Under the pieces are notes generated by a model. The model was not told the DNA's origin. It ran no database searches and saw only the letters and a list, made by a program, of their open reading frames with translations. The translations under genes were made by a program, and so were the position numbers. A stretch of DNA of 60,177 nt, filler included, from Hausera hauseri (lineage: Eukaryota), in the NCBI GenBank assembly GCA_046269625.1. It is 12 parts of 12 records of this genome, joined end to end, with 100 filler letters (N's around TTAATTAATTAA, not from the genome) between each part and the next. Parts side by side here need not be neighbours in the genome. Positions count along the whole stretch, not along the records: positions 54,781 to 60,177 come from JBJURY010262510.1; 11 more parts are not named here. One strand, 5' to 3'. This document shows, one piece after another, positions 557 through 60,177 of this stretch. Position 1 is the first letter of the stretch, and each line of letters starts with the position of its first letter.

Positions 557-3500
557 GTGTTCACGTTAAAAGCTTCTACCATCGCACCGACGCCTCAACA
601 TATAAACTTCCTTGTCAACACAGGCGCAGTGATATCGCTCCTACCGCTCACCTTTCCCATTCAAAACGTTACATCTAAAGTAAAATCTCTTTTTACAACT
701 TCCGGACAACCGTTGCATGTTTCCGGAACTTCTACACTTTACTTCACCTTACCAAACTTCTCTGAATTTCGTTGGACATTTACAGTCGCAAATGTCCAGA
801 CGGCCATTTTTGGGTCCGATTTTCTGTCGCACTACAATCTTCTGGTGGATTGTAAACAACGTTGTTTGAAAAGTACCTTCAGTAAAATTCAAACCAAACT
901 GATGAATAGCGTCTCAACCGCAGCACGGATGAGTATCGCACGGAAGTCGGTTTTGAAAGTACCAGCTAATAAACCAGTTATTTCCCATAATTATGATATA
1001 TTTCGTAAATTAATAAAATACGATATCGACAACGAAGCAAGATTAAACATGGACAAGCGTGATTTCGTCACCATAGCATAAACATAGGACAGAATCACTA
1101 CCTCAGATACATTTTCCAATACATTCAGTCTACCTCAAAACTTTCCAGATGTTGAGCCATTGAGTAACTTTCAAATTTCAATTATTAATGACAACGTCAT
1201 TTGACTCCCGCCTGGTCTTTCACAATTGCCGAAAAATCTGCAACAGTACCTTAATACGTCATGTAGTCGCGTACTTAAAAAGGATAGATCTTTCACACCA
1301 AAAATGGCAGTTTACACCACATTATTACACAACACCAAAGACCCATTCGTCAAAAGGTACGACCATTATCATCCAGACAGACAGGCAGTTGAAGCTGAAT
1401 TCGCAGACTTTGAACGCTCCGGGATTGTACGCCGTTCGAAATCGCCTTGGTCTTTTTCTTTACATGTCGTGCAAAAAAGGCCGGATCGTGGCGACAATGT
1501 GGTGATTATCGGCAGCTAACCTCTTTGACTATAATGGACGCTTATCCCTTACCATTGATAAAAGACATATTATATCGTCTCAATTCCACCACTGTCAATT
1601 CCATTATTGACTTGGCCAAGGATTATCACCAAATCCCGGTGGCACCCAAAGATGTCGAAAAAAGAGCCATTACTACACCTGTCGACGTTTACAAATATTT
1701 ATATATGCCTTTTGGCCTACGGAATGCCGCACAAACTTTCCAGCGTCACATGGATGCAATTCTTTCTGATCTCCTTTATGCTCATCCTTACGTTGATGAT
1801 ATTCTAGTTGTTTCTTCATGCATTAAACATCATGAGAAACATCTACGATCCATCTTTCACCGTTTACATCAATGCAACCTGCAGATAAAGTTTACAAAAT
1901 GTGATTTCTTTAAACGATGCATAAATTTCCTCGGACACGTTATCTCTCCTGAAGGGCATTCTCCTCAGCCTGACCGTGTCGAAGCCCTCAAAAACGTACA
2001 ATTATCGCTTACAACCACTGAAATGAGGAACTTCCTGGGTATATTGCACTTCGTCCACAAGTATGTTCCATATTGCTGGAGTTCTTTTCACGCAAACTAT
2101 TACCTCCTGAAACCAGATACTCCACGTTCGACCGAGAACTCCTAGCGATAGTTCTCGCCTTAAAACATTTTTCACATTTGCTTACTGATCAGCGTTTCAC
2201 CATACAAACTGACCATAAACCCCTAATAAACATCATGGCGATGAAACATCCTTCTATTCAACAGGAACGGTAGATTTCGTACTTGTCGACATTTAATTTC
2301 GAAATCAAACATATCAACGGAGTTAACAACTTGGTCGCTGACTTTTTATTTCGGTCAGTAAGCTCAATTAACTTTAGGCCTATTTTCACTCAAAACCAGC
2401 TTCAGGAAAACCAACCATCACAAGACATCCTTAAATCTTTTACTTCCTGCAATATCATTGACTGCGTGGCTCTCGACACGTCCAGACAAGGAGAGCCTAA
2501 AATAATCTTAGCTCGTGCCTTGCAAAAACCGGCATTCAACAGTATACATTCCCTACATCACTCTGGTGATATAGCCACTTTTTGCTTGCTCCACCGACAG
2601 GTAATTTGGCCGTCTATGCGTTCTCATGTGCAAGTGTGGGTTAAGGAATGTGTGGCCTGCAAGAAATTTAAAACCATCAAACATTTGAAGCCACCAATAT
2701 GTCATTTTTATTGCAAATCGCGTTTCAAGTCCGTACACAGATCTTGTTGGTCCGCTTCTTCCTGACAACGATCATCGGTTCATTTTGACCATGATGGACC
2801 GTTCTTCCCGATGGCCAGAAGCTGTCCCTTTGCGGAGCTCTAACACGGATAAAATAGCCGACGTTTTCATACGCACTTGGATCAGCAGGTTTGGATCCCC
2901 TAGGTTCATTATTACGGACCAAGGTACTTAGTTTGAGTCCAAATTGTTTAAATCACTCGTTAACTGATTAGGAATCAGCCATATACACACAACACCATAT
3001 CATCCCCAATCGAATGGCCTTTTAGAGAGATTCCACAGAACACTGAAAACGTCACTGAGAATACTCGCTGAACCCAATAGCAGTTGGACTGCTTTTCTTC
3101 CGTTAGTTCTACTGGGTTGGCGAAACACTCCTTCCACTTCTACAGGTAGTTCACCTACGGAAACCCTATTCGGAGCACCTGTCCGTTCATTATTTGAGCT
3201 AACTGTCTTGGAAGATACACCTACAGACGAAGCTATCCAAACGGACAGGACTACTTTGTCGCAGTCAGTAAAAATTCATTCTGCAGAATACTACATAACA
3301 ATAAAACATACCTACCGAGGATTTATATTCTGCAGTTTGTCTGGGTGAGAAACCAGACGCCGTACGGTTTTCAACCGCGTTATTTGGGGCCCTACAAACT
3401 TGTTCAATTGCACTCTCACAATGCCATTATTTTTAAAGACGGTAAGGAATTAGCGGTGCATATCAACAACGTCAAGCCTGCCTTTTTCGTAGATGAAACC

Positions 3501-3600
3501 CCCCAATATGAATCTTCTACCCCCTTTCTAACTCCTTCACCTATCCCTTTTTTGGTCTCTACGCCCCTGTACCTTTTCCCATTCTGATCCATACTTCTAC
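557..3600 (+). pseudogene. pol: Gypsy pol (PR-RT-RNase H-integrase), fragmented, with an internal deletion near 2075 between RT and RNase H
   Basis: ORF fragments 557-1081, 1447-2145, 2073-2273, 2283-2765 and 3345-3587 carry the standard motifs; the connection region present in the copy at 26700-26900 is missing. Confidence 0.93.
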
Positions 3601-3940
3601 TCCCTTCCCTGAACCTGCTGCAAACTCCCCTTCTACAAACCCAACATCCTTTACTTTCTTTTCTCCTGCATCTCCTTCTCCAAATCCTTATTCGTCCTTG
3701 ACCGACACAGCACCTTACACGACATAATTCGACATTGTTTTACCTCAATCATCTTAGCAATCAGATACAAAGACATCGAAAAATCGCAAATCAGTCACAT
3801 TTAGTACCTACAGTAGGGAATTAAACACTGAAGGGATACAGCGTCTTATACATACGAAGACCACTTAGGTAGTCCACACTGTTCCGTTTTTGCGTTTGCT
3901 TTCTTACTTCATTCTATTTTTATAGTTTACACTTTGCCAC

Positions 3941-54780: not shown

Positions 54781-57700
54781 TCTACAAGAAAGGACAGTGT
54801 TGTTTGCACTCAATGTACCTATGGGGATTGATTTTGATGGAATCATAAGATCGCCTGACACGTTAGCTCCATTCATGATACCAGTCACTCCAGAAAACAG
54901 AACACCAAAAACAACGAGGGAATTAACATCATCTTTTGTTGAAAAATCGATAAAAAAATCAGGGAAAATATTTGACCGAAGGGATGCTACACTGAGACCA
55001 GTGAAATTAGGAAACACTGTGATATAGGTATTATCCTTTATAAATGTCTGAAACTCTTCTGTCTTAATTTTCCCACTTTTCATGTCTATTTTAAGGGCCA
55101 GTAGTAGTGTAAACGTAACTTTATCGGCTTCATATAATCCACGGACCGCATATTTCCAAACTACAAAAGTCATATACTCAATAATATTCATAATTCTTTT
55201 CTGAGTTACGAGAGATTTCTGAGATCTCTGCATAGATAAGTCAAACAGTCCCGAAAACTGACGCAAGGAAGTCTGATACATGCTATTAACAATGCTCATT
55301 TCTACGATAAGAAAGTATAAAATTGATCCTCGAGTTGCCACAGGTCGGTATTCCTCTCGAGCGGAGTTAATTTTAATTTCAGTATCGGATGCTATCTGAA
55401 GTTTTTGACTGACATCAGCAGCAATTACTTTTGTTATTTTCAATGTTTTGATGAGGTCTTCGTCATCGACAAGGGAGCCTTTAACACTGGTCAGCCTGAA
55501 TAGCAAATTTTCTTCTAATTCTTTCATTTTTGTTTTATTCGACTGCACGTCTTCCATTAACTGCAGTCTCTGTGATTCTAACTCTTGTTTTTCAGTTTGA
55601 ATGACAAGTCCTAACAGCTGATCTTCCAGACCTTTTATGGTTACAGTAAAATCAATAATAGATGTTCTTGCAAAAATTTCTGGCGTATAACTCGGGTTCG
55701 GCAGTTTTGTCGTTATGTATAGATAAAATCCTTTCATAACATCGATTTCTTTGTCACCAACTTTAACTTGGAATGATGATCCCTGTTTAATAAAGTTCTT
55801 TTCTAAAACGTTGTCCAATGCTGGATCCAATTCTTCCGATACATCTTCGATTAGAAGAGGTCTTCCCAAAGACAAAGCATCCTCAAGATGTTGTCGGAAA
55901 TATTTATGAATCAATGATGTGATTCGCAGTTCATTTCGACCTTCTCTATTTTTTATCCAAATTTTACCTTGACCCTGTGGGTCAATCAACAGCGGATATC
56001 TACTAGCTTTTGTGACGATAATTCCGTTTTGAACAGACAACTCATCGTTCGGTAAACCTTGAAGATTCCATTCACCAAGCGTAGTTGGATCAGTTAGTAT
56101 GTCGATCAAGTTAAGCGTTGAGGTAAACGGTATTTTTCGAGTCTTAAGTTCCTTTTGCCAACTTGAATTGAGTAGATTTCTAAATTCTTGATTGAACGGA
56201 CCGCAGTAAGACAGAAAAGCTGTTGCCGACAAAACATCCCCAACAAGTCTTTCGATTTGTGTCTTAAATTCACTGCTTTGATTTGTCCATCTTTCTTTCT
56301 CACCAGCAAGTCCTTCGATTAACTCAGTGGCGGCAAACATTTTACGTCTACACGTTTCAGCGTCTTCCAGTAGAGCTTGCTTTTTCCGAAGTGTATCATC
56401 ATAAAGAGCTTGAACCTTCGCCAATTCTCGTTGTTTCTCGTCGAGTATGGCCTGAGCTGCATTTAGGTCTTCCATTAAGAATGCATCTATAATAAAGGCC
56501 AATACAATATTCCTAACCAGTAAAACACAGACCCAATGAATAAGAACAAAAAACAGTCTCGCAACCTTATTTGTTGTGAATACAGCTCCAAGTAGAAGAA
56601 TATGCCAATTGTTTGAAACAGTCAATATGACCATCAGAAGAAAACCGTCCAGTCCAGAATTAAAATTTAAAATACAGTAATGGGCTTTTACAAAATCAGA
56701 ATTAGTTAAATATTTATTACCACAATCAACAGTGTCATTCGAATCAGGATATTGATATACCAAATTCTTTGGAATAGAATATCTATTACCGAAAAATTCA
56801 ATACCAAGGCAAACGAATATATAGTAAATTGAAAGTTGGATGGCAGCGTAAGAAAACAACGAAGGTAATAATACAATAATGCAATGGGCAATTAACCTGA
56901 AAACACGAATTAGGGTTATTACTTTTATTAGTCTTAGAAGTCGAAGAGCAAGTAAAAAACTCAAGTATTGATTTGAGAATGCTATATGAAGCATTTTATA
57001 TATTTCAGTGATAATTAAACTCACAAGCGCAGCCATTATAATTACAAAGTCAAAAATATTCCACGTGTCCTTGAAATAAAGATTGACACCGGCTGCAAAC
57101 ATTCTTATCATAAGTTCACAAACGAAAATAATCGTAAAAGCCCATTCGAAAGTCGCTTCAAAAGTCGTTCCATCAAATGCGATCATTAATATTGCGTTCA
57201 GTAAAACAAGAAATTCAAAAAACAATTTCGTGTATGTAGAACGAATTATCGGAATTAGAAATTGATTTGGTCTCGACATATAACAGCTATAAAATGATGG
57301 CAATGATTTTTCAAAATATTTCCTCGTCATGGGTATTTCTTCAAATCTCAAATAAATATATTCTGTTAACCTGGTAAATTGGTCAGGTGATAAATCACCA
57401 GACTTATCGGTATCCAATAATCGAAAGTACATTTCAAGTTTAGCTTCACTACTCGTTGGCGATACTTTTTTCATAACATTTATAAATGTAACATAATCCA
57501 TCCTATCCTTTTCTGGATTTCGAAGCATTTGAAATGCAGTTTTCAGACGTTGCTTTTTACACTTTACATTTTTTATTACATCGAGACCAAGATGCGTTTT
57601 ATAAGCATTATAAACACTGGCAACTACTATACCCATAAATATCCAATTACAGATTATTGTAACTCCCAAATAAATCAGTATATATAATCGACTATTTTCA

Positions 57701-58662
57701 TATCCTGGAATAATAACATCCGGGGAATTTGATGTTGTTACCAAAACATAAAGGTCAAAAATCGAATCAAAGTAATTGCTAAAATACGGATCAATCAATT
57801 CCACAGTTTCCTCATTGATCATGTATTTTGGAAAGTTTACGAGGTTGTTCAAAAATCCTTGATTTGACATCAGTTTTAATGATTCACTCTCGTCACCCAC
57901 ACAACACTGTAATACATTCGTGGTCTCGTGTGCTTTTGCCATTATTTTCTGCCAACTTTTATCGATATTACTAAATCGTTTTGCTTCTTTCGGTAACTGT
58001 TTTGCAATGTAATTACCTAAGAACCTTTGTAGAGGTAACTTGATGATATCTCTATCGGAAAATAAATTTCTTAAAAAGTTATAAACATCTTCAACTTTTT
58101 CAGGTCCGCCCATATTCATCATCAAAATACCTGTTTTTGGCTCATTGTATGTTGAATAATATTTTATTAAATGTTGTCGAAAAATGCAATTCTTTCCCAA
58201 ATAACTTATGACATTAATTTTCTTTTTTCGCAATACTATATTCAAACTGTATTCAACGCAGACAAAATTCAGCAATTTGTTTGTATATTTATAAATTTTA
58301 ACGACATAGAAAAAACCGCGTGGAGTTCTATAAACAAAAACAGGACTCACCGAGCTATTCCGATAAAGCATTGACATAATGTCGAAAGTTTGAAAAAAAC
58401 TGGCACAATATGCAAAATGTATTGCCGAGACTGGACATCGTGGAGGAGCAAAGTTCTGACACCAATTGTTGATTTCAGCGGCCGAAGAGTTCTTAAAATT
58501 ATTAGCGAAAAGTATCATAATGTCAGGTTTAACCTGCATTTTTGGGTGCATGGAAAACGACTTTGATATTTCCAGAGGCACCAATTGCATAGCATAAAAT
58601 TTCTGTATAATAGCCGGAATACATTGTATTTTAAAAACTAGTTTCAATTTTCGTCTACCCAT
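54781..58662 (-). CDS. Chimeric intronless ORF (~1294 aa, 3'-truncated): unknown N-terminus + ferrochelatase + dynein + dynein + two-pore channel + dynein + SLC12A9
   Basis: Single stop-free frame containing recognisable blocks from four unrelated genes. Confidence 0.88.
54805..55035 (-). pseudogene. SLC12A9: Cation-chloride cotransporter (SLC12A9-like) fragment within the chimera
   Basis: NFTGLS...[35 protein letters not shown]. Confidence 0.8.
55036..56475 (-). pseudogene. DNAH5: Axonemal dynein heavy chain (DNAH5/8-like) fragment, stalk return and AAA5 region, within the chimera
   Basis: [72 protein letters not shown]. Confidence 0.92.
56470..57790 (-). pseudogene. TPCN: Two-pore channel fragment (pore I to S6 of domain II) within the chimera
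   Basis: [19 protein letters not shown]-hand-like [46 protein letters not shown]. Confidence 0.88.
57781..58008 (-). pseudogene. DNAH5: Two short axonemal dynein heavy chain (DNAH5/8-like) fragments: linker region, then stalk region
   Basis: [29 protein letters not shown] then [30 protein letters not shown]. Confidence 0.85.
58000..58140 (-). pseudogene. FECH: Ferrochelatase N-terminal fragment within the chimera
   Basis: [40 protein letters not shown]. Confidence 0.9.
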
Positions 58663-59409
58663 TTGGTCAAAATCGTAAAAAACAAAACTGCTTTCGAGTG
58701 AAGTAACAATCTATTTTAAACTTCAAAAAATTACAATCTTTCTATTTCGCGTTACCGCGATATTAAAACAAAACACATAACTCTATATATATATATGCAC
58801 AGTAAAAAAGGGTGAATCCGGTCCTCGCCTACAGAACTCCACACGATCATAATTTATGTCATACCATACAATTACAGAAACTCTAGTAGAATGTACTACA
58901 CATTTATCAATTTCCCCAACAATAAACAACACAGCAAAGTTATCTGTGAAATTTTATCTTTATTTGGCCAACCATTAAACATTTCTATGGATAAACAATT
59001 ACCAGTGATCATGCAGAATATGTTAAATTTACCTACTTCATGCGACTTCAATTCTATGGCACTAGATCTTATCATGGATTTAATTTTGGATAATTTCTTG
59101 TTCAATGTCCCACAAGTTCGTAGCTTCTTTGAAAACCCCCTCCTCACGGCACAAGGTCAATCCCATTGTAAACAAGGCAACACGAACCATACAGAATACA
59201 AATACTTGGTTTTGAGGCAGGTAGAAATAGGTAGAGATAACGCATTTCAACTATTTGATAATCAGCTGCTCAGCGAACTCCACAATACGACAAATTTCCA
59301 GGCAAACATCGCCATAATAAAAAATTCATTGGGAAATGTAGTCTACTCAGTTGTCGATAGCCAATATGAGTGTGATAAATTCTGTTGAGCACTACAGTAT
59401 GGAACTACA

Positions 59410-60177
59410 GAATCAAAAAATTAAGACATTGGTTAGGCCTATGCGGGTATTATGCCACTTACGTACCAGACAACTCGAAAATTAACGCACCACTATATCG
59501 CCTACTCAAAAAAGGAACTAAGTGGAGATGGACAGGAATGGAACAAAATGTATTCGATGAAATGAAGAAAGTTCTGACAAGCGAACCAGTTTTAAGATAC
59601 CCGGATTTTAACCTACCATTCGTCATTAAAACAGATCCAAGTAAAAAAGGCATAGGATACGAATTAGCTCAAAAACGAGAAGTCTAAGAATTAGAACATC
59701 CAATAGCTTATGGTGGACGCTAATTAAATAAAGCATAAAAGAATTATTCGGTTACCGAATTAGAAACGTTAGCCGTAAAAGAAGCACTACGACATTTTAA
59801 TGTCTACATTTACCGACAAACGATTATCATTGTGACTGACTACAAAGCAGTTACGACATTAAAAGGACGAGCTAACAACCCAACATGTAGATTAAACCGT
59901 TGGATTGAGGAAATTTCAAGATATAATATTGAATTCCAATACAAACTCGGTAACAAACACGTGGATGCCGACGCATTATCAAGATTAAAGACAAAAACGA
60001 GTTCAATCATCACACTAAAGAAACCACAACTTGAACAGTTGATCGAACGGCGAAGAACTTTAATATGGGATAAGACAATTAGAATTACAGCGGAGCAAGC
60101 TAAAGATATGGTTATTCAACAGATTATCGAGTTCGTACAAAACGACAAAATACCAAAAGGACGGCAACTGAAAAAGC
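59410..60177 (+). pseudogene. pol: Gypsy RT C-terminus and RNase H fragment
   Basis: LRHWLGLCGYY..PLYRLLKK..PVLRYPDFNLPFVIKTD..NYSVTELE.LA..TDYKA..NKHVDADALSR. Confidence 0.92.

What the first reader, a model, noticed from the sequence alone, without database searches (positions are those of the whole stretch)
54781..58662. Stop-free ~1.3k-aa ORF stitched from four unrelated host genes
Seen: one reading frame contains, in order, ferrochelatase, two dynein heavy chain pieces, ~440 aa of a two-pore channel, ~480 aa of dynein and SLC12A9. All pieces are sense, in frame and intronless, and the ORF lies next to a Gypsy RT fragment. Known: LTR retroelements can capture mRNAs by reverse-transcriptase template switching. 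Inference: this is a multiply chimeric retrocopy. Five junctions all in frame would be about (1/3)^5 if frames were random, which suggests selection for an open frame (translation, or escape from nonsense-mediated decay). The source may be a retroelement-driven mRNA-shuffling system.
Basis: partly seen in the sequence, partly recalled or inferred. Interest (0 to 1): 0.92.

Follow-up and report, generated by a model that had tools for sequence, protein, structure and literature searches.

The report
In-frame mosaic retrocopy of host genes
A flatworm-like animal genome carries a young, several-copy, intron-less patchwork of four host genes joined at short shared motifs, which is the known product of reverse-transcriptase template switching and shows no sign of being a working protein.

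Summary
On the minus strand, 58662..54781 is a stop-free 1294-codon frame, cut by the contig end. It is built of seven blocks: 116 aa from a high-copy ~530-nt repeat, then ferrochelatase, two DNAH5-like dynein pieces, 435 aa of a two-pore channel, 480 aa of the same dynein, and an SLC12-family piece.

Contigs from independent public runs bridge the ferrochelatase/dynein and dynein/dynein joints. They show a roughly 8-20-fold more abundant form that lacks the channel block, in which the dynein is contiguous. They also show a low-depth ferrochelatase contig with a 40-nt GT..AG intron that the mosaic lacks.

Four of the six joints lie on 2-9 residues shared by donor and acceptor. This matches microsimilarity-guided template switching with repeated rounds of retroposition (Tan et al. 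2016; maize Bs1).

Copies differ by about 0.9%, with a neutral synonymous share (4 of 15), so the protein is not conserved. Selection for an open frame remains possible but is not shown. The carrier element is unidentified, and the channel, SLC12 and repeat joints lack independent read support.

The parts
54781..58662 (-). Stop-free mosaic ORF of 1294 codons. ATG at 58662; the 3' end is cut off by the contig edge.
58317..58845 (-). High-copy ~530-nt element bounded by imperfect inverted repeats (58317-58351 / 58811-58845; the terminal 11-13 nt are nearly perfect). It holds a TA-run at 58784-58796 and the ORF's ATG with its first ~116 codons. Its type (solo LTR or MITE-like) is unresolved.
   Evidence: inverted repeat I1; depth 670-3065 against 113-158 for the mosaic; coding-like codon use in the ORF frame only; no relative found
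57997..58316 (-). Ferrochelatase block, aa ~117-222: a presumed presequence plus the first ~50 residues of the mature enzyme. The parental-type contig has a 40-nt GT..AG intron between 58025 and 58024 that is absent here.
   Evidence: (table 5c)
57880..58023 (-). Dynein piece 1, aa 214-261, equal to DNAH5 1639-1684 (DHC_N2). It overlaps the ferrochelatase homology over 'FLGNYIAKQ'.
   Evidence: The joint is bridged by X2 contig 57940-58127 (table 8).
57781..57888 (-). Dynein piece 2, aa 259-294, from the microtubule-binding domain ('ESLKLMS...[13 protein letters not shown]'). It is joined to piece 1 on the shared '(D)ES' motif.
   Evidence: The joint is bridged by X1 contig 57781-58010, depth 113.
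56477..57780 (-). Two-pore-channel block of 1304 nt, aa 295-729 (homology runs 291-731), equal to TPC3 232-671. It replaces exactly 161 nt of dynein. It enters on the shared 'PYF' and leaves on the shared 'L(M/V)E'.
   Evidence: In one search the contigs break at 57781 and 56476, and a depth-143 contig joins 56476 to 57781 without the block.
55038..56476 (-). Dynein piece 3, aa 729-1208, equal to DNAH5 3437-3923 (stalk CC2 and AAA5). It is collinear and has no intron.
54781..55037 (-). SLC12-family (cation-chloride cotransporter) piece, aa 1209-1294. It belongs to a more numerous repeat (depth 378). A related contig shows an intron-acceptor-like end at 54855|54854.
   Evidence: (tables 3, 7, 8)
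59379..60176 (+). Decayed LTR-retroelement pol fragment (RT_RNaseH_2 / RT_RNaseH) with stops at 59685, 59721 and 59736. It is a neighbour on the opposite strand and is not shown to be part of the mosaic.
   Evidence: (depth 11000-35000)

Best explanation
This is one copy of a young, several-copy family of chimeric retrocopies in an AT-rich, flatworm-like animal genome.

Inferred mechanism: a reverse transcriptase copying one RNA jumped to other, co-present mRNAs at short stretches of similar sequence. That stitched sense pieces of spliced ferrochelatase, DNAH5-type dynein and SLC12 messages behind the start of a repeat-borne ORF. The product was copied to roughly 8-20 copies. In a later round, one copy acquired 1304 nt of two-pore-channel mRNA by two further switches, out at 'L(M/V)E' and back at 'PYF', replacing 161 nt of dynein.

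Why the frame is open: the copies are young (about 0.9% apart), and switches guided by similarity between coding RNAs tend to land in the same frame. The encoded protein is not conserved. It is most likely a transcribed or silent passenger and not a working gene.

Shown: the mosaic anatomy; intron loss at one site, with a hint at a second; two joints bridged in independent runs; a more abundant form without the channel block; neutral differences between copies.

Inferred: template switching itself; the order of the steps; retroposition as the means of amplification; which element supplied the RT.
For: - Seven blocks, all sense and in one frame.
- Each block, scored with a codon model trained on the other blocks, prefers the ORF frame, so all share one codon usage.
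- Intron loss: a contig of run X1 at depth 7.7 matches both sides of 58025|58024 but carries 40 extra nt that read GT...AG on the ORF strand. A second contig ends ...CAG| at 54855|54854.
- The dynein block matches DNAH5 3437-3923 without gaps.
- Donor and acceptor homology overlap at four of the six joints: FLGNYIAKQ (aa 214-222), (D)ES (259-261), DPYF(S) (291-295), ME (730-731).
- Independent contigs bridge two joints: X2 57940-58127 and X1 57781-58010 (table 8).
- A 487-nt X1 contig (depth 143) and a 633-nt X2 contig follow the window up to exactly 56476 and then leave it. The X1 contig rejoins at 57781 with 161 nt between. That is exactly the 53 2/3 codons separating those points in orthologous dyneins.
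- Contig depths: mosaic 113-158, channel block 15-38, intron-bearing ferrochelatase contig 7.7.
- Window versus abundant form: 12 differences in 1411 nt. Of 15 listed substitutions in host-derived blocks, 4 are synonymous, against a neutral expectation of 0.26.
- Published precedent covers microsimilarity, partial mRNAs, multi-parent chimeras and secondary retroposition (PMC5131818) and a hybrid ORF from three host genes in maize Bs1 (PMC13317346).
Against: - No LTR pair, primer-binding site, poly(A) tail or target-site duplication could be seen. The 3' end lies beyond the contig, and the 5' repeat could not be typed.
- The only recognisable RT is on the other strand.
- The spacer 58899-59228 upstream of the ORF has the same depth as the mosaic, so the amplified unit is wider than the ORF. 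Amplification could therefore be DNA-level duplication.
- The channel, SLC12 and repeat joints are not bridged by any contig that the tool listed.
- Six in-frame joints still have only about 0.3-5% probability under my own null, so something more than chance may be acting.
Confidence: 0.6

Rival explanations
1. Same origin, but the open frame is maintained by selection. The family spreads through an RNA whose survival or use depends on an uninterrupted ORF, for example by escaping nonsense-mediated decay or by translation-coupled reverse transcription. Only in-frame captures then leave descendants. The element would act as a frame-preserving exon shuffler.
For: - Six of six joints are in frame, with probability about 0.3-5% under the measured in-frame share of 0.42-0.6.
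- Captures are nested by abundance: repeat > SLC12 piece > ferrochelatase-dynein > channel block. Each layer keeps the frame.
- The channel block adds exactly 381 codons net.
- The two length differences seen between copies in host-derived blocks are 3 nt and 15 nt (table 4).
- The ORF starts at the first ATG downstream of a TA-run inside the repeat.
Against: - This is a single locus, and it was picked out because its frame is long, so ascertainment is strong.
- Absence of stops is expected at this age, P about 0.2-0.4.
- No RNA run holds the stretch, and no expression data exist.
- No sibling mosaic protein is in the databases.
Confidence: 0.2
2. Some of the joints are assembly or library chimeras in a short (5.4 kb) repeat-rich contig: channel block/dynein, dynein/SLC12 and repeat/ferrochelatase. 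Only the ferrochelatase-dynein core would then be real.
For: - The listed contigs of all four runs stop exactly at 57781, 56476, 55037 and ~58310-58324.
- None listed bridges these joints by 31 nt or more (table 8).
- The abundant form lacks the channel block.
Against: - Contigs of a de Bruijn graph must break at such branch points even if the joints are real.
- The channel block is present in X1 without a mismatch over 1269 nt, at a single-copy-like depth.
- It replaces dynein sequence with both ends in frame and on shared motifs. Random mis-joins would not do this, and a k-mer assembler cannot join on fewer than ~20 shared bases.
Confidence: 0.1
3. DNA-level shuffling, either replication-based template switching (MMBIR/FoSTeS) or capture by a DNA transposon (Pack-TIR-like), acted among pre-existing retrocopies. 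Amplification was by segmental duplication.
For: - An inverted-repeat-bounded repeat sits at the 5' end.
- The co-amplified upstream spacer suggests a unit wider than a transcript.
- Microhomology joints also mark MMBIR and Pack-TIR capture (PMC8277862, listed).
Against: - All pieces are sense and spliced.
- The inverted repeats enclose only 58317-58845, not the host pieces.
- Strand uniformity at six joints is expected for RNA templates and not for DNA breaks.
Confidence: 0.07
4. It is a functional new chimeric protein-coding gene.
For: A long open frame with an ATG behind a TA-run, and coding-like codon use throughout.
Against: - Differences between copies are neutral, 4 synonymous of 15. 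Both the window and the abundant form changed conserved dynein residues, and the abundant form lost a codon in the conserved 'KASRYPLL' motif.
- The blocks are fragments that cannot fold as their parents do: half a channel, and a stalk without a motor.
- The N-terminus has no confident fold (pLDDT 46).
Confidence: 0.03

Closest known systems
LTR-mediated retroposition by microsimilarity-dependent template switching (Tan et al. 2016, Genome Res, PMC5131818)
   Same: Partial, spliced, sense mRNA pieces. Joints on short shared sequence. [quoted passage not shown] Products behave as non-autonomous elements that go through further rounds. Young copies keep the parental frame.
   Different: There are more parts here: four host genes, seven blocks and six joints. 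Every joint is in frame. Flanking LTR-retrotransposon sequence in the same orientation is not demonstrated. The host is a flatworm-like animal, a group not covered there.
Maize Bs1 (Jin & Bennetzen 1994; Elrouby & Bureau 2001, 2010; as reviewed in PMC13317346)
   Same: A hybrid open reading frame built from segments of several cellular genes inside a low-copy retroelement.
   Different: Bs1 has defined LTRs and is expressed as a protein. Here no LTR pair and no expression are shown, and the copies evolve neutrally.
L1/LINE template-switch chimeric retrogenes (bipartite and tripartite chimeras such as U6-mRNA; recalled from the literature, cited within PMC5470649, listed)
   Same: RT jumps between RNAs give same-sense, intron-less multi-part copies.
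   Different: Those carry a 3' poly(A) and target-site duplications, often have a small nuclear RNA as the 5' part, and are not in frame. No RNA family was found here, and the 3' end is not visible.
Retroviral oncogene transduction (Gag-onc fusions)
   Same: A host mRNA piece fused in frame behind the start of an element-borne ORF by non-homologous RT recombination.
   Different: There the frame is kept by strong selection on the fusion protein. Here the protein shows no constraint, and the N-terminal repeat ORF is not recognisable as Gag.

Membership tests
Template-switch (LTR-mediated) chimeric retrocopy | Host pieces lack the introns of their parental genes | tested here: met
   A 40-nt GT..AG segment is present in an X1 contig and absent from the window at 58025|58024. 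An acceptor-like loose end lies at 54855|54854. The dynein block is collinear with 484 aa of DNAH5. The parental loci themselves were not seen.
Template-switch (LTR-mediated) chimeric retrocopy | Partial mRNA pieces, all in sense, from two or more parental genes | tested here: met
   Ferrochelatase, DNAH5-type dynein (three pieces), two-pore channel and an SLC12 member, on one strand and in one frame.
Template-switch (LTR-mediated) chimeric retrocopy | Microsimilarity between donor and acceptor at the switch points | tested here: inconclusive
   Homology to donor and acceptor overlaps by 2-9 residues at four joints.
Template-switch (LTR-mediated) chimeric retrocopy | Flanked on both sides by sequence of one LTR retrotransposon in the same orientation, with both LTRs | tested here: inconclusive
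   On the 5' side there is a 530-nt high-copy element in the ORF's orientation with terminal inverted repeats and a TA-run, but no primer-binding site follows it. The 3' side is cut by the contig end. The RT/RNase H fragment is on the other strand.
Template-switch (LTR-mediated) chimeric retrocopy | Secondary rounds: several copies sharing the same joints | tested here: met
   Contigs bridging the dynein/dynein joint have depth 113, against 15 for the channel block and 7.7 for the intron-bearing ferrochelatase contig. The same pieces occur in four studies. Whether the copies arose by retroposition is not shown.
LINE-type chimeric retrogene | 3' poly(A) tract and target-site duplications | not testable with these tools
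Pack-TIR / Pack-MULE transduplicate | Captured host fragments lie between the terminal inverted repeats and keep their introns | tested here: not met
   The inverted repeats enclose only 58317-58845, and the host blocks lie outside them. At least one intron is lost.
Functional chimeric gene | Purifying selection on the encoded protein | tested here: not met
   4 synonymous of 15 differences, against a neutral expectation of 0.26 (binomial p = 1). Conserved dynein residues are changed in both forms.

The most novel reading that the evidence does not exclude
The family is a non-autonomous retroelement lineage whose spread depends on an unbroken reading frame, through escape from nonsense-mediated decay or translation-coupled reverse transcription. 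It would then accrete host mRNA pieces only in frame, acting as a natural in-frame domain shuffler in a flatworm genome.
Probability: 0.12. Interest if true: 0.8.

Novelty: new member of a known kind. Interest (0 to 1): 0.42.

Why it matters
The locus is an unusually rich example of RNA-mediated exon shuffling: four host genes, seven blocks and six joints. An intermediate stage is still present in the same genome, because the abundant form lacks the channel block. The order of captures can therefore be read directly.

It also gives a concrete and cheap test. A genome-wide count of in-frame versus out-of-frame joints, set against the 0.42-0.6 null measured here, would show whether retroposition filters chimeras for an open frame.

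If there is no such filter, this is an ordinary decaying passenger of retroelement activity. Its main practical relevance is as a trap for gene predictors, which would annotate it as a giant dynein/channel fusion protein.

Tried and rejected
- The look-up of sequencing runs and read laying allow one call each. Contigs bridging the channel, SLC12 and repeat joints were not among the 32 pieces listed, and I could not ask again.
- Three word-index protein searches (whole ORF, aa 1-300, aa 285-740) found only ordinary dyneins, ferrochelatases and flatworm two-pore channels. No sibling mosaic turned up.
- The N-terminal 116-120 aa gave nothing usable:
  - no Pfam hit and no PDB hit;
  - no usable Atlas hit;
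  - AlphaFold pLDDT of 46;
  - HMMER over 1.84 billion representatives gave three hits, which I reject because their scores are inflated by tandem repeats (FAM75-like, seven identical 31-aa matches).
- No Rfam family was found, no tRNA gene and no tandem repeat of note.
- Two exact 34-mers, one at the dynein/dynein joint and one at the ORF start, were absent from the metagenome contigs.
- I considered dicyemid, orthonectid and rotifer hosts because of the 40-nt intron. I dropped them when the channel block's nearest relatives proved to be flatworm proteins and Rotaria dynein was only 66% identical.
- I considered the abundant dynein-like contigs to be the real DNAH5 gene. I rejected this because one of them spans the dynein 1684 to ~3340 joint, and another has lost a codon in a conserved motif.
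Full report
**What is there**

The piece 54781-60177 carries, on the minus strand, an ATG at 58662 followed by 1294 codons without a stop, running to the contig edge at 54781. In the same stretches the other five frames hold 20-43 stops per large block, and the sequence is 35% G+C, so the open frame is not chance.

Pfam finds these domains:
- Ferrochelatase (aa 176-230)
- DHC_N2 (214-262)
- EF-hands (371-432)
- Ion_trans (476-728)
- the dynein stalk (731-836)
- AAA_9 (864-1084)

Alignments to solved structures and to 209 fetched homologues fix seven blocks:

| Block | aa | Identity |
|---|---|---|
| 1 | 1-~116 | no relative found |
| 2 | ~117-222 | ferrochelatase N-terminus |
| 3 | 214-261 | DNAH5 1639-1684 |
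| 4 | 259-294 | dynein microtubule-binding domain |
| 5 | 291-731 | zebrafish TPC3 232-671 (E 1e-68) |
| 6 | 729-1208 | DNAH5 3437-3923, collinear, no gap |
| 7 | 1209-1294 | SLC12-family transmembrane segment (E 2e-6; the family is shown, SLC12A9 is not) |

**Host**

The channel block's nearest relatives are flatworm two-pore channels, 40-44% identical, plus one unnamed entry at 60%. The dynein block is 69-76% identical to mollusc and flatworm DNAH5 and 66% to a rotifer's. Each block, scored with a codon model trained on the other blocks, prefers the ORF frame. All blocks therefore share one codon usage and come from one AT-rich animal genome, probably a platyhelminth.

**Reality and copy number**

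Four public runs from four studies hold parts of the stretch. I laid their contigs on it once.
- An X2 contig (57940-58127, 2 mismatches) bridges the ferrochelatase/dynein joint.
- An X1 contig (57781-58010, depth 113) bridges the dynein 1684 to ~3340 joint. This core is therefore not an artefact of one assembly.
- Contigs of the ferrochelatase-dynein part and of the spacer 58899-59228 have depth 113-158.
- The channel block has depth 38 (56474-56805) and 15.3 (56810-57746), with no mismatch in 1269 nt.
- A contig of the intron-bearing ferrochelatase form has depth 7.7.

Taking 8-15 as the single-copy depth, the mosaic without the channel block is present about 8-20 times. The tool warns that summed depths are not copy numbers, so I use the depths of single contigs only and treat the ratio as rough.

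A 487-nt X1 contig (depth 143) and a 633-nt X2 contig follow the window to exactly 56476 and then leave it. The X1 contig comes back at 57781 with 161 bases between. In orthologous dyneins the two points are 53 2/3 codons apart, which is 161 nt. The abundant form therefore holds contiguous dynein. The window's copy has 1304 nt of channel in place of those 161 nt, a net gain of 381 codons.

**RNA origin**

The X1 contig of depth 7.7 matches both sides of 58025|58024 but has 40 extra bases. Exactly one of the six equivalent placements reads GT...AG on the ORF strand, with exon flanks AAG|G. This is a short intron of the parental ferrochelatase gene, missing from the mosaic. A second contig leaves the window at 54857 with ...ATCACAG| just upstream of the match, which looks like an intron acceptor in the SLC12 parent. 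Together with 480 collinear dynein residues, this supports spliced mRNA as the source. The parental loci themselves were not available.

**The joints**

Homology to donor and acceptor overlaps at four joints:
- FLGNYIAKQ, where ferrochelatase has ..FIAKRL and dynein has F.G.DIAKQLP
- (D)ES
- DPYF, where dynein has L.PYF and TPC3 has SPYF
- L(M/V)E

This is the signature of microsimilarity-guided template switching. Tan et al. describe it for retroviruses, for yeast Ty1 and for LTR-mediated retrocopies of flies, mosquitoes, fish, birds and mammals (PMC5131818). Their account includes partial mRNAs, chimeras of several parents and further retroposition rounds of the products. Maize Bs1 is a hybrid ORF built from three host genes. 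The nested abundances fit stepwise accretion over such rounds: 5' repeat 670-3065, SLC12 piece 378, ferrochelatase-dynein 113-158, channel block 15-38. That is inference, not demonstration.

**Why is it in frame?**

Between the coding blocks of this ORF, the in-frame shares are:
- exact shared 6- to 10-mers: 42-48%
- longer imperfect matches, 11 of 12 bases or 13 of 15: 59-60%, from small counts of 13/22 and 6/10

Six in-frame joints then have a probability of roughly 0.3-5%. The locus was also selected for attention because its frame is long.

Within the frame, the window differs from the abundant form by 12 of 1411 bases. Of 15 listed substitutions in host-derived blocks, 4 are synonymous, which is exactly the neutral share of 0.26. 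At some conserved dynein positions the window has the derived residue, and at others the abundant form does. The abundant form has also lost a codon in the conserved KASRYPLL motif. At 0.5-1% divergence, 0.8-1.7 new stops are expected, so the probability of seeing none is 0.2-0.4.

The protein is therefore not under constraint, and the absence of stops is explained by youth. A filter for open frames at the RNA level remains possible. The two length differences between copies are 3 and 15 nt, and every layer of capture keeps the frame. I give this reading about 0.2.

**The 5' end**

The ATG and the first ~116 codons lie in a ~530-nt element (58317-58845) of much higher depth. It is bounded by an imperfect 35-nt inverted repeat whose outer 11-13 nt are nearly perfect (CG(T/C)GTGGAGTTCT... 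on the ORF strand). It contains a TA-run at 58784-58796, about 125 nt upstream of the ATG. Its ORF frame has coding-like codon use, while the other two frames and the flanking non-coding DNA do not.

Nothing recognises the peptide. Pfam, PDB, the Atlas and a full HMMER scan all fail, and the three HMMER hits are repeat-inflated. The fold model has pLDDT 46. I cannot say whether the element is a solo LTR or a MITE-like element. No primer-binding site follows it.

The spacer upstream (58899-59228) shares the mosaic's depth. The amplified unit is therefore wider than the ORF, which leaves DNA-level duplication open as the means of amplification.

**The neighbour**

59379-60176 on the plus strand is a decayed LTR-retroelement RT-RNase H fragment with three stops. 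It belongs to a repeat with contig depths of 11000-35000. It is on the opposite strand and in a different abundance class from the mosaic. Its proximity is no evidence that it was the carrier.

**Limits**

The joints of the channel block, of the SLC12 piece and of the 5' repeat are not bridged by any contig the tool listed. Graph contigs have to break at such branch points, so this is neutral evidence. A mis-join is unlikely for the channel block, because both of its ends are in frame on shared motifs and the block is present in the reads at single-copy-like depth. Direct proof is still missing.

**Verdict**

This is a real multi-parent chimeric retrocopy family, a new and unusually elaborate member of a known kind. 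It is most likely a neutral passenger of retroelement activity. The in-frame property is largely, and perhaps wholly, explained by similarity-guided switching between coding RNAs, by youth, and by the way the locus was noticed.

Noticed in passing
window 58891-59388 (+): A 165-codon open frame lies on the plus strand between the repeat and the RT fragment, in the same depth class (158-200) as the mosaic. It has no Pfam or PDB hit. The Atlas gives only weak HEAT/ARM-repeat leads (score 0.87). Codon use is mildly coding-like (p about 0.02). It may be another captured host fragment.
   Followed up: partly
window 56806-56809: Contig depth in X1 steps from 37.9 (56474-56805) to 15.3 (56810-57746) inside the channel block. 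Either a second copy shares only the 3' third of the block, or a parental exon ends here. This is unresolved.
   Followed up: no
window 54862-55037: The SLC12-like piece has depth 378 in X1 and carries the same five differences from the window in all four runs. The contigs of X2-X4 all end at 55037, and X3's version lacks 15 nt. The piece belongs to a repeat more numerous than the ferrochelatase-dynein mosaic.
   Followed up: partly
window 59379-60176 (+): An RT_RNaseH_2 / RT_RNaseH fragment of an LTR retroelement, with stops at 59685, 59721 and 59736. Its family is extremely abundant: contig depths are 11000-35000 against about 15 for single-copy sequence. Many internally deleted variants appear as joints.
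   Followed up: partly
window 55787-55827 and 57044-57078: Runs X2-X4 hold G+C-richer contigs that match only 34-40 nt of conserved dynein or ion-channel motifs and then run on as unlike sequence. Those runs therefore contain other organisms, and the flatworm-like genome is a minor or low-coverage part of them.
   Followed up: no
window 58025|58024: The parental-type ferrochelatase intron is only 40 nt long (GTATTC...TTAAG). This points to a genome with very short introns.
   Followed up: yes
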